64,000 bases of DNA from Octopus sinensis (taxonomy: Eukaryota): assembly GCF_006345805.1 (NCBI RefSeq), contig NC_043007.1:28954001-29018000 (forward strand). Reading direction: 5' to 3'. Made by a program: the position numbers and the translations under genes. Positions 13,145-61,798 of this stretch are shown piece by piece. How positions within the stretch are numbered: position 1 is the first letter of the stretch; every line of letters starts with the position of its first letter. The notes under the pieces are model-generated. The model saw only the letters and a list, made by a program, of their open reading frames with translations. It searched no databases and had not been told where the DNA came from.

Positions 13145-14942
13145 ATGCATTTGTCAGTGTTATTGGGTTTAATATTCTTGTTATCAAATGTGATTGTATC
13201 TGTTGTGGTATCAGCAGCTTCAGACGAATGTGTACTCAGTATGGTGATTCCAAGGAATAAAATTAAGAGTTCTTGTAGCGATGTTGAAAGCTTGTCAAAA
13301 TTAGTTGATAAAAACAGAGAGGACATGTATGATTTCGATAAAAAAATGAAGTCATTAAAACATATGTTACTGTCTCATATTCAAAGCAGTACGGGGAAAA
13401 GGATGAGTGTAACTTCTCGAATAAATCGTCTTGAAAAGATTATTAACCAGCTGATTGGAAATCCTGATAGCAGTAGGACTGGAGAAGAGCATGGTCACCG
13501 TAAAACAGATACAACTTCTCATCCATATTACTATGGGAGATCATCAATAAACAATCACCAAGTGAAAGACGAAGCTTTAGCTGATGTGCCACAGTTAGAG
13601 ACTATTGTTGAGAAATACACGTTGAATGCCTTTCGCAATGTCAACAACACCATATCGCAAGAGGTTGATAAACGTTTTAAAGCATATGAAAATAATTTCA
13701 ATGAAGACCTGCAGAGAAGTCTAGATGACAGCATCCCTAGAGATGATATTGTTCAAAAACTTGATGATGGAGTAAGAGCTGAACAACCAGTATCAAGTGC
13801 TCGTATTATGTCGACGGTCCTTTCTGCAGAACTTAAAGAGTTGAGGAAAAATATTCGAGAACTGACAAGAAAATATCAGGAAATGCATAAAAATTATTAT
13901 TCTCTTGAAGAAAGACTGAGGATTGAAAGTAACAGCATTCAAGGACAACTTAATGCAACCAAGGGAGTAACCCTCCAAGTCAAGAGAAAAGTTCAAACGA
14001 TTGAAAGAACTGCAAATAAAACCATAGCTGAGGTAAAGATGTTGAATAAAAAAATCCCAAACCTAGAAGACTGGCGTTATGAGATCAATAACTCTGTACA
14101 CAGGGCAAATATTTCAGCAATGAAGAACATTCATAGAATGTCAAATCAAATTAATTCAAGTTTGTATGAATACATAGATGAGATTATGGGTCCTTTGGAT
14201 TCCAAGATCCAAGAAATTGTAATTGGTTCCCAGAAGCTTGAGGAACTCATTTATGACTTGAAACATGATCTTAATGATACACAAGAAAAACATGCTGGAT
14301 CTCTGGACCAGGTCCAGTCCAAGATCAGACAGATTGATGATGGAATGAAATTGCACTTCCTGAATATTTCACAAATTCTATTCACAGCAATCAGTGCTCT
14401 CAAAGGCACAGACAACCAAACCATGGAGAAATTACAGAAATACAATGAAAGCATTAATATCATGAAAGGCAATCTACTGGGTAAAATACAACATGTAAAC
14501 TTCACAATGCAACTGCTAAAGAGTCATACAAAGAACCAAAGTGAAGAGATGCAGAAACAAGCCAATGTTATAAGACATTTGAATGAAATTCTGAATTCAA
14601 CGTCTTTGAGAATGAATGCCATGAAGAAGGAACTGCTACAGTTTCGAACTGAGGTGCTTGTTAATTCTGGGAAATGGGCACCCTATAATTTCTCATTCCA
14701 TGATATCACAAGTGATTGTTATGGTACACGATATATAAAGAAAATTCCGTACCATGTTGGAAGGTATGTTGGTGTGATACTTTGTGGTCAGCCTGAAAGA
14801 TATAAAATTCTTCTCAGTAACAGAATGTTTTCAGGGTATTTGGATATAGCAGACAATTTTGGATCAGGAGATGACCACTGTGAATTTGTAGGATCCAGCC
14901 GAAGAACATTTAATTGCAAAGGCTCAATCGAAACAAAAGAAG
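13145..14942 (+). CDS. coding exon A of a secreted coiled-coil protein with an ABI3BP(TARSH)/FNDC1-like C-terminal domain (632 aa spliced)
   Basis: Uninterrupted 599 codons. In-frame TGA at 13106 precedes ATG 13145. Signal peptide MHLSVLLGLIFLLSNVIVSVVVSA. C-terminal WAPYNF..DCYGTRYIKK..YVGVILC..RYKILLS..YLDIADNFGSGDDHCEFV parallels the ABI3BP C-terminus as I recall it (C.GKQYVKR..FVGVQLCNSLRYKIYLS..IGDQRGHGEDHCQFV). Phase-1 donor AAG|GTTTGT at 14943. Confidence 0.92.
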
Positions 14943-16035
14943 GTTTGTACATTCTTTTCTTTATCTACTTTAATCTGATGTTAAAACTTTAAAAAAAAAA
15001 AGAATAATCTAGAATTTCTACACTATCACCTTCCCCCCCACACACCTTACTTCTCAACGTTACATTTCAGTATTTCATGCTTTGTGGCATTGTTTTATTC
15101 TACACTTCCTCCCCAAAAAATTTCTGTTGATTAATTTTGAAATCAGAAATCTTAATTTTCAGACTAAAGTTCCAATAGTGCTAAAAAACCGTTTCTATTT
15201 GACCAAGATTTCTTCTTATTTTATAAACAGTCGATCATATAACGGCATACCTGCTGTTGTTTTAATAATCCTGACTACAACTGAAAGCAGAATCAAAATA
15301 ACTTTACTTTTAACTCACTCATATTGACAACACTGATATAATAACAGGGCTACTACATGGTCACTTGATCTACTGGAAATAGAAACCAAATCACCCTCAA
15401 ATCACTTCTTACTGTTCTTAAAAAGGAAGTACACCTTAGATAAATATAGTCCTAAATGCATTATATCTCAGCAAATGACATGATGGTCATAGCTATGACC
15501 ACAGTTGGGCTGGATCAGGCTTGACCAAGGGTCACACAACAACAGTTCATTCAAACATAGATTTCTAATCTATTTAGTGAGTGTGGTGGTGGTGGTGGGG
15601 AGGTTATACCTGTTTATAGGTTAACCCGAGTATATGACTAGTTATATTATATTTTATATGAATACTGCTGGAAGGAAAGTAAAAGTGGAACTTAGAAATA
15701 AAAAAAAATTATATTTGACATTGAGAAATACCCATGCTTAGAAAGGTAGAGAGATGGGGGGGGAGCAGGTGTTGATGAGCCGTCTTCATGTGGGTGGGCA
15801 TGGATGGATGTTTATGCATATGGCTGTATATATATATAAATGTGTGCACTTGTTTGTTTATGTAAGTATGTGCATGTGTGTTTGTATGTGTTATGTGTTT
15901 GTAGGTTAATGCGTGTATATCATTGCATATGTGTGTGTATGTAATTGCATGAGTATGTATGCATTCGTACTAAATCTAAAACCTAAAATATAAGATAAAC
16001 TTTCATTCATTTTGAATTACTGTAAAAATTATATA

Positions 16036-17338
16036 CAGGGCTTCCCAGAAAGATTCACCCATTGATAATTCTTAATTATTCAAAATAAACTTAAGGTAGG
16101 ATAATGAAATTTGGCACACCTGTTCTAATGTAAATTGTCAATTCACTGAATTAATTACATTTCAGAATAATCCCCTTTTGCCTTGATCATAGCCTGCAAG
16201 TGAGAGGCCACTACTGAGTTGCATGAGCTCCATACCACCTCTTTATCCAACTGGACCCATGAAGACAGAAGGGATTTCTTCAGGTCTGACACATTTGAAG
16301 AGGAATGAGCAGAAACTTTCATTACTCTCTAAGATGGACCAGATAGCAAAGTCCATGGGATTGATGTCTGGACTTGAGGGAGGCCATATCGTCTTGTCGC
16401 AAAAACCACCAAAATGCTCAGTGTTAAATTGGACATGTGGGCTGCAGCCCCATCTTGAGTGAAGATGTAATGGTCACCAAAAGTTTCTGCGACCCAGGGT
16501 AACTCTTTGTTATCTGACATTTCCACATTTGATTTTGACATCACTGCTGACCTTAACACCAGTACTGATGAAGAGTAAGAGAGACTTGAACCCATCAGAT
16601 GCAACTGTGGCCCAATCCACAAGTGAAGCTGGCTTCTGATGGCATAAATGACTCCTGCTACCTTCAGGCAAGTCTCCTGCATTATGTGCATAAAGCTTGT
16701 CATTCTGCCTGTTGGTAACTGCCTCCAAGGTGAAGATCTTCGCATTGGACCAGATCAACTCTTTGTTAGTGGTGTGCTTCATCTCAGCTAACATGGTTTT
16801 ACCCCAGTTGAGCTGTTTCTTCTTGGAAGCTGCTAAAACTGATTGCCAGGATTGTTTCTTGTATGCAGTTAGCTTTAAATCCTCTTTAGAAATCCCGGGC
16901 CTTGACAATTCTGAAATACCAAGAGCTTTTGCAGTTTTTCTTGCACTCCTGCAGTGACCACAGTTCATTCACTTCTTCATAGCTTCAACAGTTTTTTTGG
17001 GGGGTACAAACTGATTGTTTCCTACCAGGAATTGGTTTGCTAGAGGTAGTAGCAGACTTCATATATTGTTTCCAGGAATTGAACATTGTTTTACAGCACA
17101 CATTCAACTGTTTTGTTATGTCCTTGTTGCTCACTCCAGCTGTTTTCAAAGCAACAATCTGGTCACGTTTTGCTTTAGATGCCATGCTTGTTTACAAACC
17201 TGTTATGGACGAATGAAACAATAGACATATGGACTAAAGACAGGTGCGAATCTTTATGTAAAATGTAGATAATATTATCTGAACCAATATTCTTTAGGAA
17301 GAGTTTTAAACAGGGGTAAATCTTTCTGGGACACCCTG
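16036..17338 (-). mobile_element. full-length decayed Tc1/mariner element, maT/DD37D-like
   Basis: TA on both sides (16034-35, 17339-40). 25-bp TIR caggg(ct/tg)tcccagaaagatt(c/t)accc. Transposase MASKAKRDQIVAL..WSNAKIFTLEAVTNRQND..QDGAAAH..(frameshift)..WPPSSPDINPMDFAIWSILES; the third catalytic residue is D (NPMD), not E. Confidence 0.92.
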
Positions 17339-17388
17339 TATACATATGTACATGCATACATATATACATACATATTTTGTGTGTGTAT

Positions 17389-17940
17389 CATCATCATCAT
17401 CACTTAACGTCTGTTTTCCATGCTAGCATGGGTTGGACGGTTTTGACTGGGGGCTGGCAACCAGATGGCTGCACCAGGCTCCAGTCTTGATCTGGCAGAG
17501 TTTCTATAGCTGGATGCCCTTCCTAATGCCAACCACTCCGAGAGTGTAGTTGGTGCTTTTTACGTGTCACCTGCACAGGGGCCAGTCAGGCAGTACTGGC
17601 AATGACCTTGCTTGAATCTTTTTACACGTGCCACCAACACAGGTACCAGTGAAGCGACGTTGGTAACGATCACACTCGGATGGTGTTCTTGGCACCCTAC
17701 TAGTACAGGCATAAGTGCCAGTAAGGCGATGCTGGTAGCGATCATACTCGAATAGCCTCTCTGTCAACGATAACACTCGTATGGTGCTCTTTGCACCCCG
17801 CTAGCATGGATGCCAGTCATCGAAATGATTTTGATTTTGATTTTACTTGCCTCAACAGGTCTTCGCAAGCAAAGTTTAGTGACCAAAGAATGGAGAAGCT
17901 ACGCAGAAGTGGGTTGGTTATGCTCCTGGCATAGGCCATG
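17389..17940 (-). mobile_element. RTE-LINE 3' UTR/tail copy (family B) with internal modules
   Basis: (cat)n tail plus ggatgcccttcctaatgccaaccactccgagagtg and repeated gccagtaaggcgatgctggta.cgatca.actcg modules. Confidence 0.85.
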
Positions 17941-18310
17941 TTTATATGCATATATGTTTATGTATAAGACTGGATGTATATGCATATATGCTTTTATGAA
18001 TATATATGTGTGTGTGTGAATATAAGGCAGATGGAAGATGGAATATACGAGAATTTATTATTAATCACCAATTATTGAGTGTCTCGCCCATGAGGAATTG
18101 ATGCTAAATGAAATGAAACAATTGTTGGGATTAATAACAAATTCTCATATTCCATCTTCCATATACCTAATCATCACTGTGAAAGTGACCATGCTTTCCC
18201 AGTAAGCTGCCAGGTGTAACCCACTCATTTTATTATCCATTATATATATATATATATATATTTATATATGTACAGTTATATGTGTGTATGTGAGTATGTA
18301 TAGTATGTAT

Positions 18311-18900
18311 TTCTCTCATCATCATCTTTTAGTGTCCATCTGTCTTCTATCCTGGCATGAGTTGAATGGCTTGACAAGGTCCAACAGATCCGAAAACTGC
18401 ATCATGCTCCGTTTGCCATGGCACGGTTTCTACAGCCAGAGGAACCGCTTAATGCCAACCACTTTACAACATGTATTGGGTGCTTTATTCTCATGGCACT
18501 GGTCATTGCAAGGTCCCCATGTAGCTTTAAAGACTAAGATCCCCTTTGACTAATTGAGACTGCAGTAGAAAAAGGGGTAGTTTTAAGTGGAGAGATGAGA
18601 GACGAAAGAAGAAGCTAGAATAGAACAGATGTCCTGTTGTAGATGAAACACATTGCTATTTGGAAGATACAAGTGTGGGTGGGAGTAACTAGGGTGAAGC
18701 TAGAGAGAGAGGGAGAGATGAAATAGTAATGATGAAGCATCAGGGTATACCCTTCAGGTATAAGGTGGATAAGAGTGGGGACAGAAGAGCATGGAGTGTG
18801 GGTGGGTAGGGGCTGCAAATGTTGTGGGGAGAGTGGGAGGGAGAGAGTGAGTGAGGGTAGATATAATGAATGAAGAATAAGTGTTGATCAATATATGTTA
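18311..18900 (-). mobile_element. older RTE-type 3' UTR with long purine/pyrimidine-skewed tract
   Basis: Diverged family-B tail followed by a G/A-rich + strand; same layout at 42325, 52360, 59518. Confidence 0.5.
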
Positions 18901-18933
18901 GAGGGAAGATAGGGAAGAGTGTGTGTACGCATA

Positions 18934-18964
<31 letters not shown>

Positions 18965-18969
<5 letters not shown>

Positions 18970-19900
18970 AGGTGCTTCCAAGACCTCAATTTCACTGAGC
19001 TGGAATGGTCTCCCTGAGCACTGCATATCGACAATCACTCTGGTTCTTTGTCATCTTAGCCTCCCTACTTCATTCCACATCTTCCTGGGCCTTCCTCTTC
19101 CACAGGTTCCTTACATGTATAAGGATCAGCACCTCTTTATACAGCTGTCCTCCTCCATGTGTACCACATGTCTGTAGCAGTGCAGTCTTCTTTCTTGCAC
19201 ACAACATCTAATTCCTCTGATAAACAGATTTCCACTTGACACATTTGTACTTAATCATTCAAACACACACACTGCACATCCAATACGCCATGATAGCTTC
19301 ATTTCTTTCCAGTGTTTTCAAGTCCTCTGCTGGCATTCAGAGCCCATACATCGATCGCTACCCTACAGTTTCACACTTCTAATACAAGTGCCATGTAAAC
19401 TGTTCGTCATTCTCAGGAAAGAGACCTTTGTTGCCAGCACTGACAGCAGCTCCCTGAACTTTCTCCAACCTGTTTTTACCCTGGCTACAATACTTTCAGA
19501 GCAACCAAATCCTTTGTGAATTACATCCCCTAGCTAACAAAAGCTGTTGAGTGCTTTTGGTGAGCCAACTGAGCATTTAAGAGAATCTGTTTCTGGAGTG
19601 CTCTTAGTACCTATGTATCTATCACATATGAAGCTTACTTCTTGTATTAGTCTACCTATGATTCCACCACACCTCTTGTGTATCCATGGCTCACATTGAG
19701 ATCATACCTACTCCTTTTCTACATATTGAACAAAGTTATTTCTCTGAAGATACTAAGGTTCTGTCTTCTTCTTACTAAAACTTTTGTCTGTGCTACAGAT
19801 GCGCTGCATATAAACCCATTACTATTGAAATTGGGACACCAATTTGCATATACGAAACATCCTTGTCCACTAGTGGGATAAATAAATTGCTAGTACATTA
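18965..19900 (-). mobile_element. decayed RTE-LINE ORF C-terminal fragment
   Basis: + strand cttcctgggccttcctcttccacaggttcc (GTCGRGRPRK on minus) aligns with 21045 and 38920. Confidence 0.7.
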
Positions 19901-20523
19901 ACATTGTTTTGTTTCAAGGCAATACTTTACTGCAGAATATATCTACAGATTGTAGCCAAACAATGTATGTAAATACTCGGTCTATATGCAATATCTTCAT
20001 AGGACCAATTTCTGGATTAACCTCAAAGGTTTTCCTTTTAGGTTATTCCAGAAATTGGTCTGATCCACAGATAACTCAATTTTATGAATTTCTTTTAGCC
20101 TGCTCCCTCATTTTGACATGGGTATCATCATAATTATAATAATAATGATAATGATGATGATAATAATAATAATAATAATAATAATGAGGATATTTAATGT
20201 GGTTTGACTATTTAGCATCTCTTTTAAGCATAAAGGCAGGAAAATAATTTTTTCTATGCCCTTAATTATAATTGTATTGATGATTTCACCTTAATAGGTC
20301 TTTTTTTTATATATTGGCCACTGATAAAATTTTTAACAATTTTATCTTTTATATATATATATATATATATTATATTAAATTAGAGATAAAACCACTATTA
20401 GGCAAATCAAACAATGAAAAACTTAAGCCAATACATAAAATTAATTAATTTATATTATTTTAAATATATATCAAAATTATTAAAAGTTTAATAAAAGATA
20501 ATGAGTAAAACACTATTTATATA

Positions 20524-22062
20524 TCATCATCATCATCGTTTAACATCCACTTTCCATGCTAGTATGGGTTGGATGATTTGACTGAGGACTGGTGAACCAG
20601 ATGGCTGCACCAGGCTCCAATCTTGATCTGGCAGAGTTTCTACAGCTGGATGCCCTTCCTTACGCCAACCACTCTGAGAGTGTAGTGGGTGCTTTTACGT
20701 GCCACTAACACATGAGCCAGTCCATTGCGACTGGCATCGACCATGCTCAAATGGTGCTTTTATGTGCCACTAGCACAGGTGCCAGTCAGGCAGTGCTAGC
20801 ATTGACCATGTCAATGATTTCACTTGACTCAACAGGTCTTCTAAAGCACAGTATATTGCCCAATGATTGAAGGGTTCTCTTCAAATGAGCCGGTTATGCT
20901 ACACTGGCATAGGCCACGGTTACAGTCTCACTTGGTTTTCCGGGTCTTCTCAAGCACAGCATATCTCCAAAGGTCTCAGTCACTTGTCAATGCTTTAGTG
21001 AGGCCCAACATTCAAAGGTCGTGCTTCACCACCTCATCCCAGGTCTTCCTGGGTCTACCTCTTCCACAGGTTCCCTCTACTGTTAGGTGTGACACTTCTT
21101 CTATCTAGGGTGTGACACTTCTTCACACAGCTGTCCTCATCCATACGCAACACACGACCATACCAGCAGTCATCCCTCTTGCACACCACATCTGATGCTT
21201 CTTATGTCCAACTTTTCCCTCAGGGCGCTTACACTCTGTCATGTCTGCACAAGGACATTACACATCCAGTGGAGCATACCGGCTTCATCCCTTGCAAGCC
21301 TACGCATGTTCTCAGCAGTCACAGTCCATGTTTCACTGCTGTGTAGCATGGTTCTTCGCACATATGCATCATACCTTTCACTCTGAGTGAGAGGCTCTTT
21401 GTTACCAGCAGAAGCAGGAGCTTTCTGAACTTTGCCCAGGTTATTCTTATTCTAACAGCTAAGCTCTCAGAGCATCCGCATCCCACTACTGACTTGGTCA
21501 CCTTGGTAACAGAAGCTATCAACTGCTTCTAGTTTTTCTCCGTAGCATGATATTGCTGCACCTCTTATGTGTCTATAACTTACACAGGGTACATCTTATG
21601 GAGTTTCTACCTATGCCTTTCTACAGATTTAGTAGGGATATCTACCTGAAGGGATTTGTGATTTGTCTGCCTTTCTACTTAATAAGACTTTGGTTTTAAC
21701 TAGATTGACTCTAAGGCCCTTTGATTCTAGACCTTGCTTCCACACCTGAAACTTCTCTTGTTCTGGTAGTGACTCAGCTATTAGAGCAAGGTCATCAGCA
21801 TAGAGGAGATCCTAGGGGCATCTTGACTTGAATTTCTCTGTTATTGCCTGGAGGACTATGATAAACAAGAAGGGGCTGAAAACTGATCCTTGGTGGACCC
21901 CTACTCCTACCCAGAATTCTTCACCATACTCGTTGTCAACCCCCACCTTACTGACAGCATCCCTGTACATGGCTTGTACAGCTCTCACTAACCACTCATC
22001 GATTCTGAGTTTCTGCATTGACCACCAGATAAGGGATTGGGGGACCCTGTTAAAGGCTTTTG
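20524..22062 (-). mobile_element. 5'-truncated RTE-clade LINE (RT domain to 3' tail)
   Basis: Minus strand: KAFNRVP..WLVRAVQAMY..GVGVHQGSVFSPFLFIIVL..LLYADDLAL (YADD at 21791-21802), C-terminal GRGRP..W motif, and (gat)n tail at 20524. Confidence 0.92.
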
Positions 22063-22225
22063 CCAGGCATGGTTGTGAGGTAAGAAGTTTGCTTCTCAAC
22101 CACATGGTTCCATGTTTAGTCCCACAGCATGGCACCTAGGGCAAGTGTCTTCTACTACAACCCCAGGCTGATCAAAGCCTTACGAGTGGATTTGGTGGAC
22201 AGAAACTGAAAGAGGGTCATTGTAA
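22063..22225 (+). mobile_element. type-A SINE head
   Basis: gtaagaagtttgcttctcaaccacatggttcc..gtcccacagcatggcacctagggcaagtgtcttc matches the reverse complement of 2150-2315. Confidence 0.7.
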
Positions 22226-22463
22226 ACACACAGACATATATACACAATATGTAAATGTAAGATCCAAAGATCAAGATGTAGAAAGTTAGTAAGCTTTGAT
22301 AAGTCCACAGAAGTTATAAAAAAGAACTCTCAGGAACAACAGGGGTTTATTGACGTAGAAGGTTATAAATTTTTTTCATATTGAAGTCTGATAAGCTGAA
22401 AAAAGTTATTTTATGGTTCACGGTTAGCAAATGGGGTTGCTGTGTGTGCAAATAGAAAAAGAA

Positions 22464-22819
22464 ATCCAGATTGAGGGAATGGGGCAGCAGGTAAAAGCCA
22501 GGCTACATGTCTTTCGTAGCTAGCAGAACCTCAGAAGTAGTAATTACTCAACAAGGAGTACTCCACTAGCTACTCATCAGGCTGAAGATACCTTAGTTAA
22601 ACTAAGGCTACATTATCATCAAGGGATTCCAATTTAACTCACTGGAGAAGTAATTTAAAATCCCTTGATGACAATACAGCCTTCATTGAACTAAGGTGTT
22701 GTTGGTCTAATGAGTAGCTAGTGGAGTACCCCTCGTTGAGTAATTACTACTTCTGAGGTTCTGCTATGAAACCTATGTAGCCTGGATTTTACCTGCTGCT
22801 CTGTTCCCTCAATTCGGAT
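22464..22819. repeat. 356-bp imperfect palindrome whose arms each carry a hammerhead-like motif
   Basis: Left atccagattgagggaatggggcagcaggtaaaagccaggctacat matches the reverse complement of the right end; complementarity runs to a ~25-nt centre near 22630-22655. Confidence 0.9.
22501..22584 (-). ncRNA. type I hammerhead-ribozyme-like motif (left arm of the palindrome)
   Basis: CTGATGA (22580-74), perfect 8-bp stem II GTAGCTAG/CTAGCTAC closed by G-C, GAAA (22515-12), GTA (22506-04), gcc. Stem III has a G.G mismatch and stem I is short. Confidence 0.55.
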
Positions 22820-22849
22820 AGATTCATTAGAATGTTGCACAGAATCCTT

Positions 22850-23205: not shown

Positions 23206-23487
23206 GTCATGTGGTGGTGGGGAACAGACATAAGCACAGACACACACACACATATGCTTACACACACACACACACATACAGTTGGTTTCTACATAGCTGC
23301 CTTCTTCCAAATCCACTTACCAATCATTGGTCAGCTACGGTTATAGTAGAAGATACTTGCGTAAGTTACTACACTGTGGGACTGAACCCAAAATCCCATG
23401 GTTGCAAAGCGAACATCTTAATACAGATACACCTCTGTTTGTGTGTGTGTGTGTGTGTAAATATATACATTAATATATGAACATTAT

Positions 23488-50108: not shown

Positions 50109-50150
<42 letters not shown>

Positions 50151-51671: not shown

Positions 51672-52165
51672 ATCGTTTAATGTCTGCTTTCCATGCTAGC
51701 ATGGGCTGGACGATTTTGACTAAGGGCTGGCGAACCAGATGGCTGCACCAGGCGCCAATCTTGATCTGGCAGAGTTTCTACAGCTGAATGCCCTTCCTAA
51801 CGCTAACCACTCTGAGAGTGTAGTGGGTGCTTTTTACGTACCACCGGCATGGGGGCCAGTTAGGCAGTACTGGCAATGACCTCGCTTGAATCTTTTTACA
51901 CATCCCACCGGCACAGGTGCCAGTAAGGTGACACTGGTAATGATCACGCTCGAATAGTGCCTTTTTATGTGTCACTGGCACGGAAGCCAGTTGGCTGCTC
52001 TGGCAATGATCATGCTCGGATGGTGCTCTTGGGACCCTACTAGCATGGGCACAAGTGCCAGTAACGCGATGCTGGTAATGATCACATTCGAATGGTGCCT
52101 TTTATGTGCCACTGGCCCGGAAGCCGGCTAGCCACTCTGTCAACAATCACACTGCGAATTTTACC
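51672..52165 (-). mobile_element. RTE-LINE 3' UTR/tail copy (family B) with internal modules
   Basis: atcgtttaatgtctgctttccatgctagcatggg.. plus three gccagt..gctggtaatgatca..ctcg modules. Confidence 0.85.
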
Positions 52166-52258
52166 TGACATTGATTCATTGTTTTTTGGATTCATTTTGT
52201 TTTTGTTAGTTTGGTTCATTCCTTTACATACATACATGAATGCATACACATATGCATG

Positions 52259-52289
<31 letters not shown>

Positions 52290-53448
52290 GGATTTTCTAT
52301 AGATAAGAAATCTTGAAATAAAACTGACTAATGATAGACATGCATACATATTACATAAATCATCATAATCCTTTAATGTTCTGGGCTGGCATGGGTTGGA
52401 CAGTTTTTCTGGGATCTGATGGGTGCAAGGCCTGCGTTGTACTCTAATGTCTGCATTAGCATTGTTTCTACAATGTGACTCCCTTCCTGATGCCAACCAT
52501 TTTACTGTGTATATTGAGTGGGTTTCTCATGCCAACCACTCTTGTAAGGTCATCATGCACCTTGCAAGACTAGAAACCCTGAAAGGAGATGAGGGGTTGA
52601 ATGAAAGGATCAGGACAGAAGAGATTTTTTGCTGTAGATGTGCTACATTTTAGAAGATAGGGGAGAGAGGGATCAGGGTGGAGGTGGGAAGAGATTAAAA
52701 TTGAGGTGACGAGGGGACTGGGTGGATCTTCAATGTATGAGGTGAGTAGAAGTGAGAGGGGAAAGAGGAAGTAAGTGTGGATGGGTGGGAGAGGCATACT
52801 GTCATATACACAAATACATATACACACATGCATATGTATATACATACACACACTCATACATATTATATACTTGTGCATCTATATACTCAGACATATACAT
52901 ATACTCATACACATAGATATATGTGCATACACACATGCACATACATGTACACTCACGCATAAACATAAACATACATACACAAACGCATTCACACACATAC
53001 ATACACATTCATACATATACCCACATGTGCACATACATACATGCACATGCATACATATACACATACATAAACATAGATACACATGCATATACATGCATAC
53101 GTACACATATATACATGCATTTTTATAAACAAAGACAGGTCTATCAAATACCATACAACACAAATCCTTCATTTATTAAAATTTATCTCCACTTCTCGGG
53201 GATGTATTACCATGGTCAAATGGTAAATAAAACCAGCTCCATGTGAGCAAGGGAGATAATCTCAAGAATGAAGAATTCTGCAAAGTTGACAGGACAGTAA
53301 TTCTAACATGTCCTTGAGATGTGGAGAGAATTTTAATAAACCAAGAATTCATGTTGGATACTATTTAATATGCCCATATTTGTCTGTGGTCATCAAATAC
53401 ATGTCACTGGCCAATCAGAAGCATTTCTCTGGGCTCACTTTTCTTTGG

Positions 53449-53496
<48 letters not shown>

Positions 53497-54514
53497 AGCA
53501 CGCACGTACAGCATCAACATATAGCAGCTAACACATTTACTCATCCTTGTATTGTTTGTCAGAATGTCCTGTAACCAACTGGCACAGATTTTCTTATATG
53601 TAAACAAATATTTTGCCAACTGTTATATATGAATATGTAAACACGCTGCTGTATTAACAAGCCTACTACACATATCCGTTACCCTGTTGAGGTATTCTAG
53701 TTAACAAAACTCTCTGAAGATAATCATATTTTCACACTTCTGAAAATAGCTCAGCAGGATTTGAGACAAAGCAAATTGATGTAGAAGCAGGACACACAAC
53801 CATGGGGTCACTTTGTAGTGGTTTCTACATGAACACATGGTCTACTTACCATTCTCATAATAACAGACAAGTCATTACTGACATATTTTGGAGATGGAGC
53901 ATTAAATAGCAAATTAGAAATATATGTGACGAGATAAATAGACAGACAGAAGGATTGGTAAAAAGGAAATTTAATGTAAACATTTTTAATATATGGCATA
54001 TTAAACATCTAACTAGAAATAAATATCTGGCAAGACAGGTAGATAAATGCTAAATTAGATACATACATCCATACACACATCTATAGTTATAGCACTATCT
54101 ATCTCTATACACACACACACACAACAAGCATTCATCCATCCATCTATCTACCTGTGGTAATGAAAAGTGAAACTGACAGCCAATATTTGCTATGCCTATG
54201 TATTTACACATGAGCTTTTCTTTGGATTTTTGCATCTACTGTCTCTTTTTCTCTTTCACTTCCTTTGTGTCCCTCTTCTCTCCTGCTTTTGATTTAATAA
54301 TGTGTATATGTATCTATGTATCTACTTCTCTTGCAATGTGATAAACATTTAAAAACACAAAACGAACGCCGTCACCAGTCACTCTCTTTCACTCTCTGTT
54401 TCTCTCTCTCTCGCTTTGCCACTTCTTTTATGTAAGTGTGATGCACACAACAGGTATGTACAAAAACAAAAAGTTAGCATATTAATATTATTGATAATAA
54501 TAATAATAATGATG

Positions 54515-54745
54515 ATGATGATGATCCTTTCTACTGTAGGAATAAGGCCTGAAATTTGGTGGGAGAGAATAGTCGGTTACATCGACCCCAGTACTGAACT
54601 GGTACTTATTTTATCGACCCTGAAAGGATGAAAGGCAAAGTCAACTATGGTAGAATATGACCTCAGAACGTAAAGCAGGACAAAATGCTGTTAAGCATTT
54701 TGCCCAGCATGCTAACGATTCTGCCAGTTTGCTGCCTTAATAATA
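54515..54745 (-). mobile_element. near-complete type-D SINE
   Basis: atcctttctactgtagg..acatcgaccccagtactgaactggtacttattttatcgaccctgaaaggatgaaaggcaaag..gctaacgattctgccag.tgctgcctt. Confidence 0.85.
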
Positions 54746-54949
54746 CTAGTAATAATAATAGCAATAATAATATTGAAGATTTCTTACATTTGTCACAGGG
54801 TAGTCCTGTGAGGGGAGCATTACAAGGATCAGTTACAACTGGTGAGATGGTTTACATAAAAACAACGAGGGGATTTTATGTAAAAAAGAAAAGGAAGTGG
54901 GATACATGAGACGAAAGTGTATATAGTGTACAAAATATATGAAAAATAT

Positions 54950-55500
54950 GTATAATGTACAATATACATGGATACATGGATGATGCAGTCCTCCTGATAG
55001 AGGAGAGCCTCCAATTAGAGCCAATCAAGGAACTCCACACATCCAGGATCATCCTGTTACCAAGAGCATGACTCCTCCATCCTTCTGTTGCTCTCCAATT
55101 TACAGACACATGCCTAGAGTAGCTCCATTTATTCCTAACTATTTTTTCCACAGTCACCCACCTTTTCCCAAATCAAGTGGAGGAGAGCACTTCCATCTCC
55201 ATCCTCACTCTCCTTTCCAAATGCAGCTTAGAGTCAATGAGGGCTTGACGAGAAGGAAAGGTGTTTGACATCAATATTTTCAGTCTCACCCATCTCACAA
55301 CCTTTTCCACTATAGTTACCAGATAGAAGAACACTGCCTCTTCTGCTTTGTTAAAGGAGGGTGATAGAGTAATCCTCACAATGAACTCAGTCAATTGTCT
55401 GACTCTCTGAAGAAATTAAAGTGACTCCATTCATTTAAGCAATTCTCAAATTGTAGTTGAGTGCAACCAACTGTGCCAATAAGCATTTTTTGAAATATTA
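54950..55500 (-). mobile_element. L1/Tx1-like LINE 3' fragment
   Basis: Minus strand EFIVRITLSPSFNKAEEAVFFYLVTIV..LHLERRVRMEMEVLS; homologous to 61160-61560. Confidence 0.5.
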
Positions 55501-55689
55501 GATATTGAAAAGCACCAACATTTTCAGGGAATTTTTTTTTTATAAAGTTAAAAATGATCTTTGAATTTTAATTTTATTAGCAGTCTATCTTTTGCATGTT
55601 GTTTATGTTCCGAACTACTTTTATGTTACTTTAATACCTTCAGAAAACCTGTGATACCAAATACAAATAATATTATCCATTAATTGTTC

Positions 55690-56470
55690 ATTGGATTTCC
55701 AAAGAATGGTGAATCTTGGTTCATTTCCTTCTTCTGCATCTCCTCATTTAGAAATTCTTCCTCCTCATTTATATCCATTGCCTTTTATCTTTGATGATTT
55801 TGTTTTTTCTGTTTGTATTTTCGTCTGTAATTATTTTTCTCTTACCCTGTGATGAAGATGCAATGCTACAGGTTAGTAGCATTATGGAATGAGGTATTTG
55901 CTAATCTATTTGTGATACTGGATCTAAAGATATTTCCATTGCTACTCTCAGAGTTTTGGCTGGTGGTACTCTGGAAACTGAGACTTCTTGTTCTTTTTGT
56001 TGTTTTTACTTATTTTCATTATTTTCGTGTTCCTTGTTTTTGCTGAATCTTCCTAGTATTTCAGGGAATTCATCTCTAAGGTGTATTTTACTCCTACAAA
56101 TATAAGAACCAGGTTTTCAATCCAATATTACCAAATCTCATATCCTTTGACTTCTACTGGGCACACTTCCAGCCTTTGAGCCCTTCTAGCCTTTGTAGCC
56201 TTTGAGTCTATTCTGACCATAGGTCAGCTTTTGTTAAGCCTGCTTTGACAACTCTCCCATACTGTGACACATTAATCATTAAGCTTTGTGCCCAATCATT
56301 AAGCTTAATCATTAAGCTTAGTGTCCAATGTCTCTTATTGTAACATTTGTGTTTGTTTGAGCCATGAGGCAAAAATGCGTAGTCAGAGGTATATCTGACA
56401 ATTTCAGCCAGTCTCAAACGGATAGTAAATAGTGCTAAAGATTTTGCCGTATTCAGTTGAGTTAATTTCT
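55690..56470 (-). mobile_element. possible Penelope-like N-terminal ORF fragment
   Basis: IRLRLAEIVRYTSDYAFL resembles the PLE N-terminal ..RY.SH..FL..C motif; followed by Lys/Glu/Asn-rich decayed coding-like DNA. Confidence 0.3.
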
Positions 56471-56734
56471 CTTGATATGATTTGGAAGGCTTGATGTACT
56501 ACTTAACACAAGGAGAAATTAATCTGCTTCTATCTTTTCTTAAGCAGAGATATATAATTTTTCTCTTCTCTCTCTCTCCGGATTATTTAGAGTAGCAGAG
56601 AAATGCTTTTAGGTTTTAGAAAATTCTCTCTTTACATCTCTTTTCTTGTAATTGTGGCAGATTAAAACAGATTTTGTCTGTTCATTTAGTGTTGAGAGAA
56701 GGTTTGTCTTCACCCAGCATCAACAGACCACAGC

Positions 56735-56798
56735 GCTTCAAGTTGTGGAAGACAGTAACACTATCGCTGTTACTGTCTTCCAAATTATTTCTTGAAGT
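56735..56798. other. 64-nt hairpin with a perfect 15-bp inner stem
   Basis: tggaagacagtaaca (56746-60) / tgttactgtcttcca (56768-82), 7-nt loop, outer gcttcaag/cttgaagt stem. Confidence 0.8.
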
Positions 56799-59517
56799 AT
56801 TTGGGGCAGTTTCTTCTATTAATTGTTCTCTAACCCATTCATTTTCTTTTTTGCTTTTGTATAATTAGTTCTGTTTATATTTTGCCTTGTTTTTAAGCCA
56901 TTGTAGCATTTTGTTGCGTGGCAAAAATATGTTTAGGCAGCCATTTTGGATGTGAAAATTTAAAGTATGAAAATAAATTTTTCAAAATTTGTGAATCAAA
57001 ACTATTTTTTGTTGTCTACTCCTGGGTAATGAGGGCAGCCTTTCCTTAACCAATTGTAGTTCTTTTTACAAATACTCGAAAAGAATTGCATTTGGTAATA
57101 CTTGAAGTAAAACATGTTTTGAAAAGAGAAGCAAAGACACGGAACAGACTATGAGACAGTAATAATAATAATGGCAACATTAGTAATAATAATAATAATA
57201 ATAATTGCTTCAAATTTTGGCACAAGGTCAGCAAATAGGGAGGAGGTAGTTGATTACATCAACCCCAATAATATTAATAGATGAGGGAATGATGGTGGTG
57301 GTGGCAGGGATGATGGCAGTGACAATGATGATGATGATGATGTTAAGTAGAAATTTAGTAAGAAGCAAACTAAAAAAAGGTTTTATCTGTAAATGATGTC
57401 TTGTTTGAAAATACACAAACTGTTGTTGTACATGAGAGTATGTGTGTTTGTATTTGTGCATATTATGTGTGAGTGAGCATGCATCTACGCATGAGTGTGT
57501 ATGCATAAATGCATGTGTACATTGTGTGTGTGTGTGTGTGGAGACCAGTAAGTCAATTGCAGTGTTTATATACCAATAATTATGCCATAGTGTTAATGAC
57601 TTTAGTAATTAACAAAGCTAATTTCTGTGAAGAAATAAACAGATTCTTTTTCAAGAATTGGATACATTTTGCCTGAGAGGAGGTTCCATTACAGCTGGAG
57701 GTGGCTGTTATTTAGGCATCCCTTGAAGATGGCAAAAGACTTTATACAAAGGGACAGGTTACTGGATTGTTACAGGTGTGGAATTACAGGTGAGAAGCAG
57801 CAATAATGAGATGTTACCAGATTCATGCCTTTTGCCACATTAATTAGAAGCATTAATGAAAGGAAACTCAATCAACTAGAAGCAGACATGGTCGTGCAGT
57901 TAAGGAGTTTGCTTTGCCATTTCATGATCCTGGGTTCAATACCAATGAGTAGCCCCTTGGTAGTTGTCCTCTCCCCTGGCTTTGGATCAACTGAGTGGAA
58001 GAAAACTGTGTGGAAACCTGTTTGCAGAAGTTTTCCTTCTTTTGGGTGGTTCATTTAGCCCCTATCATTTGGTCTCTTTATTAAGGTCCACTCTGTTTCC
58101 ACTATTGAGACTAAGGGACCAATCAAAGAATAACCTCCCCTGTCAATAGGACAGCCTTTATTCTTCTGGATAAAACAGAATGTACCAAGAGCTCATGCGT
58201 TAAGGGCTTAGTGCATTTGTTTTAAGGGAAAAGAGACAAAGAAGACATGCTATGTCTGTGGTTGGTGAGTGAGACACTGTAGTAGTAGTAGTAGTAGTAA
58301 CACCAAATATGCAAGCAGTGTGTCAATATGGGCCACATCTGACACCTCTGAAATTTAGTGTTGTTCTCTAAACCGCAATGCTTGTGACGTTGGTTTGGTA
58401 ATATCATTATTATTATTATGATGTCATCGCAAGATTATGAAGTGTGGTGATTGTAGTGACCTTGAAAAGAAGGAGTTATGTGGAATTTAAGTGGCCTTAA
58501 GAGGGGTTTGTTAGATAGTATTTAAAGGTAATGACCTAGTAAATGGGGTGGGTTGGTGGTCTTAAATTATCTGGTGGCATTGGTTCAAAATTGCTTTTTA
58601 GATGAGCCAACAAGGAAGCTTCTATGTGGTTGATTGACCTACTGAAAATAATAGTCAAACGTTCTTCCTGTTACACTTAGATGTCCTACAGTGGACAAGG
58701 TAGTCCTAGATATACTATATCTAAAAATAAGGGCAAATGGTTAAAATGTTATTGATCATAATTCTTATTGTTCAGGGCTGACCTGTGATTAAACACCAAC
58801 AGTATCACTGATATACATTGTGTGTCCTGATATTAATGAAGTTAGGTGTTGATCACAAGATCTTCCTGGAACTTTCTTAACCAAAGAGTCAAGTAAAATA
58901 GTCACAATAAAACAGTAAAGGTGGGGAACATTCCTGTTGTTCTGTTGTTTCTAATATAGTTACTCTTATCTTGGATTTCATTACACTTTTCCTAGACATT
59001 ATGCTGCAGTAAAATATTCCTTTTATTTACAAATAATTCACCAAAACATACTTTTAGTGCGATTTCTGCATTGAATCATATTATTGTATTCACACTCTAT
59101 GAAACAAAAAAATTATTATTTTCGTCTCCAATGCTTTGGGTGGGGTTGTGTTGCCCAAATACTGAAATGTCAGCACTGTACTCCCTGTAGTAGATGCATC
59201 AGCCAGTTGTTGTTCATTTATTCAGGATACCGGCTACACAAAGGGCTGGATTTCATTTTAATTGTGTCTGCTGCTGATACAAACTTGTCATTTATCTGAC
59301 ATTCAAGACTGCACTGTCAGCCCACCTAACTTCAGCAACAAAGTTAAATTATGTCAACATTTTTTTTTTACTATAGAAAAATCCTCCAGTTTTAAAGTGG
59401 ATTGATAATTAACAGAAGACTTTATTGGGTTAGAAATACACAACCATCAAAATCAAACTGATGGTAATATTTCTAAATAATCAAAAATATACATATTCTA
59501 GGCTTACACAAACACAT

Positions 59518-60260
59518 CATCATCATCATTTAATGTCCATTTTCCATGCTGGCATGGATTGGACAGTTTGACAGGAGCTGGACAATGCCAGAGAGCTGCA
59601 CCAGGCTCCACTTGTCTGCTGTGCCATGGTTTCTATGGTTGGATGCCCTTCCTAATGCCAACCACTTCACAGAGTGGCACTGGGTGCTTTTCTATGAAGG
59701 ACCAGTATTGGTGCTTTTTACATGGGACCAGCACCAGTGGGGTCACCAAGTAACTTACACAACAAAAATCTCTCAGCTCAGAGAGGGGGTAGTACTGAGG
59801 GAGGCGGTATTGTGCCAGTTGCAAGGTTAAAGTATGATAGAGAGAGATAGGGGTCTTACTAGAAGAAGAAATAGCTGACCATTCCAGTAGGTGTGAGAAA
59901 GCTCAAGAGAGAGAGAGGGAGAGAGATGATGCTGGAGATGCATTGGGACCTGCCCACAGGGTACAGTGGTGTGGGGAGGCTGTAAGTGATAGAGAGGGAG
60001 GGGACAGTGGAGAATGTTTCATAAGAATGTGAGGGGAGATGTTTAAAGACAGGGAAGAAGTGATGGGAGCAAGTGATGGTAAGAGAAATTGAAGTGGCTG
60101 CAGGTGTATGGTAGCAATGAGAGGGCATGGAGAGTGTACAGGTAGGCATGTGAGGGGGAGTGGAGGGTACTGCTGTGATTGGTGATCATGGGTAATGGGA
60201 AGGGAGGTGTTGGGAAGATGGGTTGTGAGGGGAGACTTGTCAGAAGAGAGATCATGTGTG
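59518..60260 (-). mobile_element. RTE-type tail with G/A-rich 3' UTR
   Basis: (cat)n ttaatgtccattttccatgctggcatgg..ggatgcccttcctaatgccaaccac..ggtcaccaagtaact, then a purine-rich tract as at 42325. Confidence 0.65.
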
Positions 60261-60779
60261 TGTGTGTGGGGGGGGGGGCTCTACTGAAAGTATCCAGAGA
60301 CCAGGTAGTGGCAGTGATGTGTATTAAACAATAATGGAATGAACTCTGCTAAAGGTATCCAAAGGCCAAGTGGTGCTTGTTTTCCACCTTTTCGATATAA
60401 CTTGAGGGAGATTTGACTGGTATTTCTTGTAGATCAAATAACCATATGGAAGGAATCCCTGCTATCATGAGGATTTTGCTTCTGCACTGTCCCACTGTAC
60501 CTCTTCCTGTATTATCATTGCGTTTCTATATTCTCCCATTATCCATCTACTGACCTGGTATCCTGCTATTGTCTCTGCATATTGTATGTTCCTACATTAC
60601 TCTTATATTTCTAATATAGGTCGTTGTGTACCAATATTCATAAATATTCTTCAGATATGAGTACAGAACTAAAACAAAGTAATTTTTAAATAACCCAACC
60701 ATAATTGCATTGAAGGCAAATAATAACCATCATTCACTATTCAGTGATACAATAGTGTTTAGTAGTGATGATGATGATG

Positions 60780-60816
<37 letters not shown>

Positions 60817-60824
60817 TAATAATA

Positions 60825-61150
60825 ATCCTTTCTGCTATGGGCACGGGGCCTGAAATTTGGGGAAGGATGAAAGGCAAAGTCAACCTCAGCAGAATTTGAA
60901 TTCAGAACGTAATGAAGGACAAAATGCTGCTAAGCATTTTGCCCGGCATTCTAATGATTCTGTCAGCTTGCCACCTAATAATAATAACAATAATAGTAAT
61001 AATAATAGTAATAATAATAATAACAACATTCCCGTTTACCAAATTTTGGGGGAGGGGACAAGCCAATTACACCAGCCCCAGTATTTCACTGGTACTTAAT
61101 TTATCAACCCCAAAAGAATGAAAGGCAAAGTCAACCTCGGCGGAATTTGA
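60825..61150 (-). mobile_element. two type-D SINE copies separated by (aat)n
   Basis: gaaaggcaaagtcaacctc.gc.gaatttgaa at ~60870 and ~61120. Confidence 0.75.
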
Positions 61151-61159
61151 ACTAATAAT

Positions 61160-61560
61160 AATAATATCTTTTAATGCAACAGAACAATGAGTGAGAGATG
61201 TTTCACATTTAGTAAAATTGAAGGATGTCAACTGGGAATAAAACTACGAAAATGTGTAAATGATAAAGTAAAAAACGAAATAGTGAAAGAGTCAGTCAAA
61301 ATAAACTCTCACAAAAGCCTAATTGTCCCAATTGCCAAAGACAAATGCTCTCTTCCAAATTCTGCACAAAAGTTATAGGTGCATATTTAAATTCATTCAT
61401 CCTGGCTTTGCTCATCACTCTTACCCATCTTTCAACAAGAGGAGAGCACTTCCAGTTCTGCCTCACCTTTTTCTTCCAGTCCCAGAAGTTGGTGAGGGTT
61501 TCACCAGAAAATAACAGCCTACAGAAGAAAACTTGTCTGCCTTTTGCAGCCAGAGGAAAT
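61160..61560 (-). mobile_element. L1/Tx1-like LINE 3' end with (att)n tail
   Basis: tcacccacctttt/ttacccatctttc..gaggagagcacttcca is shared with 55160-55200. Confidence 0.5.
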
Positions 61561-61697
61561 TAGTGGGGCATCTTTATGATAAACTATACTGACAAATACA
61601 TTCTTCTTACACACAGCACCCAAACATTTTAAAATTGAGTGAAAATATTTCTATTGATTTATCACTGATTTAACACTCATTTTTTTTACTATTTCAG

Positions 61698-61798
61698 CAT
61701 TCGGAAGATCCAAATGGGGAGAAGAACCAAAAAGACAGAAAGTAGGATTCCTTAATCCTACATGTTCATGGTATGAATGTGGAATTACCATACCCTAA
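61698..61798 (+). CDS. terminal coding exon B of the secreted coiled-coil/TARSH-like gene
   Basis: After tttcAG, phase 1 gives (A)FGRSKWGEEPKRQKVGFLNPTCSWYECGITIP*, matching the recalled ABI3BP end WYECGTTIP at nearly the same spacing from KE (24 vs about 26 residues). Confidence 0.88.

What the first reader, a model, noticed from the sequence alone, without database searches (positions are those of the whole stretch)
13145..61798. Secreted protein with signal peptide + coiled-coil stalk + TARSH/FNDC1-like C-terminal domain, with no FN3 domains
Seen: a 632-aa spliced ORF with a signal peptide, a two-Cys cap (ECVLSMVIP...SSC), about 450 aa of heptad-rich helix and a Cys-containing C-terminal domain. 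Established: vertebrate ABI3BP and FNDC1 carry this domain behind FN3 repeats and low-complexity linkers. Angiopoietins, fibrinogen-related proteins and olfactomedins use a Cys cap + coiled coil + globular head layout. Inference: this may be an angiopoietin-like oligomeric ligand or matrix protein with a TARSH-type head, an architecture I do not recognise as characterised.
Basis: partly seen in the sequence, partly recalled or inferred. Interest (0 to 1): 0.75.

Follow-up and report, generated by a model that had tools for sequence, protein, structure and literature searches.

The report
Octopus secreted coiled-coil protein, TARSH head
This is a real two-exon octopus gene for a secreted glycoprotein with a two-cysteine cap, a long helical stalk and the C-terminal domain otherwise known from vertebrate ABI3BP/FNDC1; it belongs to an unstudied family found across molluscs, so it is a modest lead to what that domain does.

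Summary
Exon 1 (13145-14942) and exon 2 (61698-61798), joined across a 46.8-kb GT-AG intron, encode 632 aa. Pfam TARSH_C matches residues 511-632 end to end (E=1.3e-35), so the distant exon is needed to complete the domain. No FN3 is present.

The protein is 98% identical to an Octopus vulgaris "hypothetical protein". A spliced decapodiform transcript contig carries the orthologue.

The layout is signal peptide, cap C-x14-C, about 390 aa of helix in four segments, then TARSH_C. It recurs in gastropods, bivalves and cephalopods; 18 of 18 aligned family members have TARSH_C and none has fn3. Shorter cap/coiled-coil/TARSH_C proteins occur in amphioxus and hemichordates, and one amphioxus protein has a Noelin-type N-terminus.

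The domain model is confident (pLDDT 94.8) but has no analogue in the PDB. N-glycosylation sequons are enriched and conserved.

Oligomerisation and ligand binding are inferred, not shown. No paper on the family was found.

Verdict: a new architectural variant of known kinds, of moderate interest.

The parts
13145..13222 (+). Start codon and predicted signal peptide (aa 1-26, MHLSVLLGLIFLLSNVIVSVVVSAAS)
   Evidence: First ATG after an in-frame TGA at 13106-13108. Hydrophobic N-terminus, modelled as helix 2-23. Equivalent hydrophobic N-termini occur in most family members. Cleavage itself is inferred; no SignalP was available.
13223..13276 (+). Two-cysteine cap (aa 27-44, DECVLSMVIPRNKIKSSC; C29, C44)
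   Evidence: Motif C-x-[LIVMY]-[ST]-x-x-[VI]-P-x(3-9)-C found in about 30 cluster representatives that also carry TARSH_C. C and P are invariant in alignment A3.
13283..13456 (+). Stalk helix 1 (aa 47-104), heptad coiled-coil segment directly after the cap
   Evidence: AF2 helix. 3.5-residue periodicity z=5.3. The profile of this region matches GCN4, CoilSer and Lpp coiled-coil peptides in the PDB.
13457..13561 (+). Disordered linker 1 (aa 105-139, Gly/Ser/His/Tyr-rich)
   Evidence: pLDDT about 30, no secondary structure.
13562..13726 (+). Stalk helix 2 (aa 140-194), helical but without heptad periodicity
   Evidence: AF2 helix. Periodicity z=-1.0. 80% identical to Argonauta.
13727..13816 (+). 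Disordered linker 2 (aa 195-224)
   Evidence: pLDDT below 50.
13817..14398 (+). Stalk helix 3 (aa 225-418). Includes the mollusc-wide motif KLEELI..L.H.LNDT (aa 365-379) with the conserved sequon N377
   Evidence: AF2 helix of 194 aa. Periodicity z=9.4 for 225-320, with register shifts afterwards. N377 is conserved in 14 of 18 family members.
14414..14665 (+). Stalk helix 4 (aa 424-507), the most conserved part of the protein within cephalopods
   Evidence: AF2 helix. Residues 421-505 are 97.6% identical to Argonauta and 81% to the decapodiform orthologue, against 84% and 56% for the head. Periodicity z=3.6.
14675..14942 (+). TARSH_C domain, first part (aa 511 to the first base of codon 600), end of exon 1
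   Evidence: Pfam PF21731. Invariant W511, C525, C547, Y553, K554, D570, D577, C579.
14943..61697 (+). Phase-1 GT-AG intron of 46,755 bp, filled with microsatellites and decayed retroelement fragments
   Evidence: Donor and acceptor read directly. RVT_1 fragments at 21812-22135(-) and 25854-26483(-). The same intron position is seen as read-through ending at a Gly in 18 or more mollusc gene models.
61698..61798 (+). Exon 2: TARSH_C domain, last 33 aa (AFGRSKWGEEPKRQKVGFLNPTCSWYECGITIP) plus stop
   Evidence: Completes the Pfam profile to position 127/127. Holds invariant R603 and C627 and the family C-terminus WYECG-x-IP. tblastn hits from gastropod and decapodiform homologues.
61910..61915 (+). 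AATAAA polyadenylation signal, 112 nt after the stop
   Evidence: Pattern search; sequence read. Use of the site is inferred.

Best explanation
The locus is a two-exon Octopus gene for a secreted, heavily N-glycosylated protein of 632 aa.

Shown here:
- The gene model.
- The complete TARSH_C domain at the C-terminus and the absence of FN3.
- The cap C29/C44.
- A mostly helical, partly heptad-periodic stalk.
- Conservation of the whole layout across Mollusca, with related short forms in amphioxus and hemichordates.

Inferred mechanism:
- After signal-peptide cleavage, the chains associate in parallel through the heptad segments.
- They are covalently fixed or further clustered by the N-terminal cysteine pair, as in angiopoietins, noelins and other 'bouquet' proteins.
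- Two or more TARSH_C heads are therefore held together at the far end of a stalk a few tens of nanometres long (a rough estimate from helix length).
- The heads are compact beta-rich modules with two invariant disulfides, plus a third, octopod-specific one.
- An invariant or near-invariant polar set (Y553, K554, D570, D577, H578, R603) would bind a matrix or cell-surface partner with avidity.
- The exceptionally conserved distal stalk (aa 421-505) and the mid-stalk motif with N377 probably form a second functional surface or an assembly trigger.
For: - Gene model. A spliced 3,036-nt transcript contig carries the 648-aa decapodiform orthologue. The phase-1 intron position is conserved.
- Identity: 98% to an O. 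vulgaris hypothetical protein, 76% to Argonauta.
- Domain: TARSH_C E=1.3e-35. 18 of 18 aligned family members have TARSH_C and 0 of 18 have fn3.
- Secretory features: hydrophobic N-terminus. 14 N-x-S/T sequons against 6.1 expected (P=0.0012), 11 of them conserved to the decapodiform orthologue. All Cys lie in the cap or the head.
- Stalk: AF2 helices, heptad periodicity, coiled-coil peptide matches right after the cap.
- Head: pLDDT 94.8; invariant residues.
- Chassis analogy: an amphioxus protein combines a Pfam Noelin-1 N-terminus with TARSH_C. Amphioxus and hemichordate proteins have a CAYTF.VP...C cap, a short coiled coil and TARSH_C.
Against: - No oligomer was modelled or measured. The AF2 monomer has low confidence for the cap (pLDDT below 50) and moderate confidence for the stalk.
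- Helix 140-194 shows no heptad signal and 321-418 has register shifts, so the stalk may fold back into bundles rather than form one rod.
- The two cap cysteines, 15 residues apart, could equally form an intrachain loop.
- The 20-residue hydrophobic N-terminus without a charged n-region could be a signal anchor.
- No binding partner of any TARSH_C domain is established. A 2019 review calls ABI3BP's functions largely unknown (PMC6426741).
- No expression data for the octopus gene were available.
Confidence: 0.55

Rival explanations
1. It is a structural extracellular fibre or matrix building block. The coiled-coil stalks assemble laterally or end to end, and the cap cysteines and the TARSH_C knobs serve as cross-linking ends. 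On this reading it is not a soluble multivalent ligand.
For: Long helical stalk with disordered Gly/Ser/Tyr/His linkers. The vertebrate TARSH_C proteins are extracellular matrix components (PMC6426741; FNDC1 in the valve ECM study listed). Gastropod and bivalve members carry long low-complexity inserts.
Against: It is a single-copy gene of modest size, without the repetitive sequence typical of structural silks or capsule proteins. The strongest conservation is in a specific 85-aa stalk segment and in the head, which suggests specific recognition rather than bulk material.
Confidence: 0.2
2. It is a type II membrane protein. The N-terminal hydrophobic segment is an uncleaved signal anchor, and the stalk displays the TARSH_C head from the cell surface, as in colmedins or class A scavenger receptors.
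For: The hydrophobic stretch is about 20 residues long, with almost no charged n-region, and AF2 models it as helix 2-23.
Against: There is essentially no cytoplasmic tail: only Met-His precedes the hydrophobic segment. Orthologues have shorter, typical signal-peptide cores followed within 5-12 residues by the cap (Argonauta, Biomphalaria, Patella). A small-residue motif (SAA/S) fits a cleavage site.
Confidence: 0.1
3. It is an intracellular coiled-coil (cytoskeletal or scaffold) protein, as the automatic names of some orthologues suggest ('cytospin-A-like', 'leucine-rich repeat-containing protein DDB_G0290503').
For: Only the automatic names. These come from coiled-coil compositional similarity.
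Against: Hydrophobic N-terminus, conserved paired cysteines, sequon enrichment and conservation. The head domain is otherwise found with WAP, Ig, PAN, CUB, Sushi, trypsin and FN3, which are all extracellular modules. No cytoskeletal Pfam domain is present.
Confidence: 0.03

Closest known systems
Vertebrate ABI3BP (target of Nesh-SH3, TARSH) and FNDC1
   Same: They have the same C-terminal domain (Pfam TARSH_C). It is 31-39% identical, shares four invariant Cys, W, YK, D..G.G[ED]DHC, R and WYECG.xIP, and sits at the very C-terminus of a secretory-type protein.
   Different: The vertebrate proteins are 1,000-2,300 aa with FN3 repeats and no coiled coil, and they end in ...IPGKW. The octopus protein has no FN3. 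It has a Cys cap and a helical stalk, ends at ...IP, and has an extra Cys pair, C591/C622.
Angiopoietins and other coiled-coil fibrinogen-related proteins
   Same: The order of parts is the same: signal peptide, short N-terminal segment with two Cys flanking a hydrophobic-x-x-V-P core, coiled coil, C-terminal globular head. Amphioxus TARSH_C proteins have caps reading QCAYTFIVPE...C. From my own knowledge, this resembles the angiopoietin superclustering segment.
   Different: The head is TARSH_C, not a fibrinogen-related domain (no PF00147 hit). Cap homology could not be demonstrated. The stalk is about twice as long and is interrupted by two disordered linkers.
Olfactomedin-1 / noelin family
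   Same: It has a Cys-containing N-terminal oligomerisation module, a parallel coiled coil and a C-terminal head. One amphioxus protein (P0081) joins a Pfam Noelin-1 N-terminus directly to TARSH_C.
   Different: The window protein has neither a Noelin-1 nor an OLF Pfam match. Its cap motif differs from the noelin CxC pattern.
Unnamed molluscan orthogroup (e.g. Biomphalaria LOC106054374, Aplysia LOC101847785, Patella LOC126824439, Lymnaea CAL1540468, Pecten XP_033751257, Sinanodonta KAL3842213, Argonauta 'LOC115217293')
   Same: These share the cap motif C-[VIL]-[LIM]-S-x-V-[VI]-P-[RK]-x-x-[IMV]-K-x-x-C, the long helical stalk with the motif KLE.L...L.H..N[ED][ST], a terminal TARSH_C, and the same phase-1 intron.
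   Different: Gastropod and bivalve members are 660-850 aa with long low-complexity inserts in mid-stalk. Cephalopod members are shorter (631-648 aa) and have a very conserved distal stalk. Octopods add a third disulfide pair in the head.

Membership tests
TARSH_C domain family (Pfam PF21731) | Full-length match to the profile above the gathering score | tested here: met
   123.3 bits against a cut-off of 27, E=1.3e-35, residues 511-632 matching profile 1-127/127.
TARSH_C domain family (Pfam PF21731) | Invariant residues of the domain: W, 4 Cys, YK, D, D-H-C, R, C-terminal WYECG.xIP | tested here: met
   W511, C525, C547, Y553, K554, D570, D577, C579, R603 and C627 are all present. These columns are invariant in 53 diverse domains.
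ABI3BP/FNDC1 proteins (vertebrate type) | Fibronectin type III repeats N-terminal to TARSH_C | tested here: not met
   No fn3 hit at E<=1 in the window protein, and 0 of 18 in the family. Control vertebrate FNDC1 and TARSH proteins show fn3 at E from 1e-13 to 1e-49.
ABI3BP/FNDC1 proteins (vertebrate type) | Three-residue tail (GKW or similar) after ...IP | tested here: not met
   The window protein ends at IP. The vertebrate hits all have 3 residues after the domain.
Angiopoietin / fibrinogen-related proteins | C-terminal fibrinogen-related domain (PF00147) | tested here: not met
   No such Pfam hit.
Angiopoietin / fibrinogen-related proteins | Homologous N-terminal clustering segment followed by a coiled coil | tested here: inconclusive
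   Pattern resemblance only. The PDB profile search hit only generic coiled coils. The database search with the cap profile returned nothing.
Olfactomedin / noelin family | Noelin-1 N-terminal domain (PF12308) and OLF domain (PF02191) | tested here: not met
   Neither is found in the window protein. PF12308 is found only in the amphioxus relative P0081.
Molluscan cap / coiled-coil / TARSH_C orthogroup (unnamed) | Signal-type N-terminus followed within about 10 residues by C-x14-C with the core S-x-V-[VI]-P | tested here: met
   C29-C44, ECVLSMVIPRNKIKSSC. The same motif occurs in about 30 cluster representatives.
Molluscan cap / coiled-coil / TARSH_C orthogroup (unnamed) | Long helical stalk with the conserved motif KLE.L...L.H..N[ED][ST] | tested here: met
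   KLEELIYDLKHDLNDT at aa 365-380. L368, L372, H374 and N377 are each conserved in 11-14 of 18 members.
Molluscan cap / coiled-coil / TARSH_C orthogroup (unnamed) | Phase-1 intron inside TARSH_C at the Gly about 25 residues after DHC | tested here: met
   Window donor at 14942/14943. Read-through models in 18 or more members end their similarity at that Gly. Paired spliced and unspliced models: P0017/P0162, P0036/P0169, P0004/P0005.
Disulfide-linked parallel coiled-coil oligomers ('bouquet' proteins) as a functional class | Demonstrated oligomeric state and interchain disulfides | not testable with these tools
   Only monomer AlphaFold2 was available. This needs multimer modelling or biochemistry.

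The most novel reading that the evidence does not exclude
TARSH_C is a recognition head with a fold not yet seen in any solved structure. Animals mount it on interchangeable oligomerising chassis: a Cys cap plus coiled coil in molluscs, amphioxus and hemichordates, a noelin-type N-terminus in amphioxus, and FN3 arrays in vertebrates. On this reading the molluscan family is a functional counterpart of angiopoietin- or olfactomedin-like multivalent ligands, with a second conserved binding surface on the distal stalk. It would offer a compact, tractable system to discover the still unknown partner of the ABI3BP/FNDC1 C-terminal domain.
Probability: 0.35. Interest if true: 0.55.

Novelty: new variant of a known kind. 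Interest (0 to 1): 0.35.

Why it matters
The C-terminal domain of ABI3BP and FNDC1 is the most conserved part of two vertebrate matrix proteins. Cardiovascular and cancer studies of ABI3BP and FNDC1 appear among the papers found. Yet the domain has no solved structure, no structural analogue and no established partner.

This family presents the same domain in a much simpler protein. The rest of that protein looks built for oligomeric display, and the layout has been kept across molluscs. It therefore gives a clean construct for structure determination and partner hunting.

It also documents head swapping on cap-plus-coiled-coil chassis outside the fibrinogen, olfactomedin and C1q heads. The gain is incremental rather than field-changing, because domain shuffling among secreted proteins is common and the gene is already catalogued as hypothetical.

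Tried and rejected
1. Cap homology. A database search with the cap profile A3 gave only 43 word candidates and none scored at E<=10. A PDB profile search matched only generic coiled-coil peptides after the cap. Homology of the cap to angiopoietin or noelin caps is therefore untested.

2. Structural analogues of TARSH_C. Foldseek against the PDB gave a best E of 1.0 with TM no higher than 0.28. Foldseek against BFVD gave a best E of 1.1. hmmsearch of the domain profile against PDB sequences found nothing meaningful.

3. Literature. Searches for TARSH/ABI3BP/FNDC1 C-terminal domain, PF21731/IPR049109, 'Target of Nesh-SH3' with mollusc or shell-matrix terms, and the orthologues' gene IDs all returned nothing relevant.

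4. Exact look-ups. No gene with exactly the O. vulgaris product P0001 is on record. So there is no neighbouring-gene context and no octopus transcript evidence.

5. Other coding exons or paralogous copies in the window. tblastn finds only the two exons. ORFs inside the intron are retroelement debris or repeat-driven.

6. An older amphioxus model (P0171) is named 'Fibrinogen C-terminal domain-containing protein'. On inspection it is only a truncated cap/coiled-coil/TARSH_C model with no fibrinogen domain. It was rejected as evidence of a fibrinogen link.

Full report
**Gene model.** The window is AT-rich (31-42% GC) eukaryotic DNA full of microsatellites.
- One long ORF (13118-14992, +) contains an ATG at 13145 that is preceded by an in-frame TGA at 13106-13108.
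- Reading from that ATG, the frame is open to a consensus donor (AAG|GTTTGT) at 14942/14943. A polypyrimidine tract and AG precede 61698, and the joined frame runs to TAA at 61796-61798.
An AATAAA lies 112 nt downstream.

The 46.8-kb intron is not a guess.
- Pfam TARSH_C matches residues 511-632 over profile positions 1-127 of 127 (123 bits, cut-off 27, E=1.3e-35). The last 33 residues, encoded by the distant exon, are needed to complete the domain.
- tblastn with gastropod, amphioxus and decapodiform homologues hits both exons and nothing else in the window.
- The orthologue of a decapodiform cephalopod lies as one uninterrupted 648-codon ORF on a 3,036-nt transcript-like contig.
- Related models that read through the junction end their similarity at the same glycine. 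This holds in 18 or more mollusc gene models, including three spliced/unspliced pairs, so the phase-1 intron is old.

**Identity.** The protein is 98% identical to an Octopus vulgaris 'hypothetical predicted protein' of 632 aa, 76% to an Argonauta hians protein and 48-49% to decapodiform proteins. The window therefore comes from an Octopus species close to O. vulgaris.

**Anatomy.**
- Residues 1-26 are hydrophobic and end in small residues (SAAS).
- Residues 27-44 hold the cap, DECVLSMVIPRNKIKSSC.
- All other cysteines (525, 547, 579, 591, 622, 627) lie in the head.
- An AlphaFold2 monomer model built on 18 family members gives helices 47-104, 140-194, 225-418 and 424-507. Linkers 105-139 and 195-224 are disordered, and the head is beta-rich. 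Mean pLDDT is 64.7, and below 50 for the cap.
- Hydrophobic 3.5-residue periodicity exceeds shuffles for 47-104 (z=5.3), 225-320 (z=9.4) and 424-507 (z=3.6). It does not for 140-194, and 321-418 shows several register shifts.
- A profile of the cap plus the next 30 residues matches classical coiled-coil peptides (GCN4, CoilSer trimers, Lpp) from the residue after the second cysteine onward.
- There are 14 N-x-S/T sequons where 6.1 are expected (P=0.0012). Thirteen are shared with Argonauta and 11 with the decapodiform orthologue.

These features fit a secretory glycoprotein and contradict the automatic names 'cytospin-A-like' or 'leucine-rich repeat-containing protein DDB_G0290503' given to some orthologues.

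**The head.** An exhaustive HMMER search with the last 135 residues found 262 proteins at E<=0.001.
- In an alignment of 53 diverse domains, W, four Cys, Y-K, two Asp, Arg and the C-terminal Cys are invariant. G.G[ED]DHCE and WYECG.xIP are nearly so.
- Octopods (the window and Argonauta) have an extra cysteine pair, C591/C622, that decapodiforms lack. This is presumably a third disulfide.
- The AlphaFold2 model of the domain is confident (pLDDT 94.8, pTM 0.89).
- Foldseek finds no analogue in the PDB (best E=1.0, TM no higher than 0.28) or among viral models. A sequence profile finds no solved relative.
- The fold is therefore experimentally uncharted.

**The family.** About 30 cluster representatives share the window's full layout: a hydrophobic N-terminus, the cap motif C-[VIL]-[LIM]-S-x-V-[VI]-P-[RK]-x-x-[IMV]-K-x-x-C, a long helical region and a terminal TARSH_C.
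- Named members come from Biomphalaria, Lymnaea, Aplysia, Patella, Haliotis, Sinanodonta, Mactra and Pecten. A chiton protein has the same layout without a recognisable cap. All are 'uncharacterized' or misnamed.
- Of 18 aligned members, 18 have TARSH_C and none has fn3 or any other real domain.
- Besides the cap and head, a mid-stalk motif is shared across molluscs: KLE.L...L.H..N[ED][ST], including sequon N377 in 14 of 18 members.
- Within cephalopods the distal stalk (421-505) is the most conserved part of the protein, at 97.6% and 81% identity against 84% and 56% for the head. The stalk is therefore more than a spacer.

**Wider context.**
- Long hits named FNDC1 or target of Nesh-SH3 from lizard, bat and skate carry fn3 plus TARSH_C, as do unnamed FN3-domain proteins from perch and elephant shark.
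- Other animals combine TARSH_C with Ig and PAN (six copies in a nemertean), WAP (hemichordate), trypsin (sea urchin), and CUB/Sushi/MAM (amphioxus).
So TARSH_C has been placed repeatedly behind Cys-containing coiled-coil modules.
- The domain also occurs in bacteria, mainly Myxococcota. One example is a Chondromyces apiculatus lipoprotein-like ORF with two copies.

**Mechanism.**
- Shown: the parts and their conservation.
- Inferred from the anatomy and from established knowledge of angiopoietins, noelins and similar proteins: parallel chain association through the heptad segments, covalent fixing or higher-order clustering through the cap cysteines, and multivalent presentation of TARSH_C heads to a matrix or cell-surface partner.
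- No partner of any TARSH_C domain is established. A 2019 review states that ABI3BP's functions are largely unknown (PMC6426741).
- Rivals are a structural matrix fibre, a type II membrane-anchored form and an intracellular coiled-coil protein. The last is contradicted by several features.

**Novelty.** No paper on the domain, the architecture or the orthologues' gene IDs was found. However, the proteins are in public databases and are labelled by InterPro-derived names. This is a new architectural variant of known kinds (TARSH_C proteins; cap/coiled-coil/head oligomers), conserved across a phylum and of moderate interest. Its main value is as a route to the function and structure of the ABI3BP/FNDC1 C-terminal domain.

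Noticed in passing
window 6744-8758: A 2-kb tandem array (periods 37, 53 and 90 nt; CACTCA-rich; 71-84% matches). It produces spurious ORFs of up to 737 aa on the + strand (6584-8797, 6751-8832). It lies 4.4 kb upstream of the gene.
   Followed up: partly
window 21812-22135 (-) and 25854-26483 (-): Decayed reverse-transcriptase fragments inside the 46.8-kb intron (Pfam RVT_1: E=3.7e-7, and a weaker match at 0.0036, below the gathering score). Other intron ORFs that look like LINE tails or transposase pieces (38800-39063, 16329-16968) gave no Pfam hit.
   Followed up: partly
window 28790-28991: A 31-nt tandem repeat, 6.6 copies, 89% matches, inside the intron.
   Followed up: no
window 12975-12990: A polypyrimidine tract plus CAG (tttatttctgcag|gag) lies about 155 nt upstream of the ATG and looks like a splice acceptor. 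The coding exon may therefore be preceded by an untranslated 5' exon. The decapodiform transcript L001 has a 728-nt 5' UTR.
   Followed up: no
L002-L031; L007 3356-4426: TARSH_C is not confined to animals. Thirty bacterial loci encode it, mostly in Myxococcota (Chondromyces, Vitiosangium, Hyalangium, Haliangium, Labilithrix, Polyangiaceae), with others in Silvanigrellaceae/Oligoflexia and a few other groups. The bacterial form has an extra Cys-containing insert (..DDD[VI]TSGGC..). In Chondromyces apiculatus a 356-aa lipoprotein-like ORF carries two copies.
   Followed up: partly
window 14915-14917 and 61761-61763 (C591, C622): Octopods (the window, O. vulgaris, Argonauta) have an additional cysteine pair in TARSH_C that is absent from decapodiform and all other family members. 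This is probably a lineage-specific third disulfide.
   Followed up: partly
window 14943-14992; proteins P0002, P0005, P0046 and others: Many public models of this family are truncated because the gene caller read through the conserved phase-1 donor into the intron. They end ...G plus 5-45 unrelated residues. In the window the read-through frame stops at 14990-14992. Whether a truncated isoform is ever made is unknown.
   Followed up: partly
P0171 (Branchiostoma floridae, UniRef C3ZG03): An old amphioxus model of a cap/coiled-coil/TARSH_C gene is named 'Fibrinogen C-terminal domain-containing protein', although the 223-aa sequence holds no such domain. This looks like a naming artefact.
   Followed up: yes
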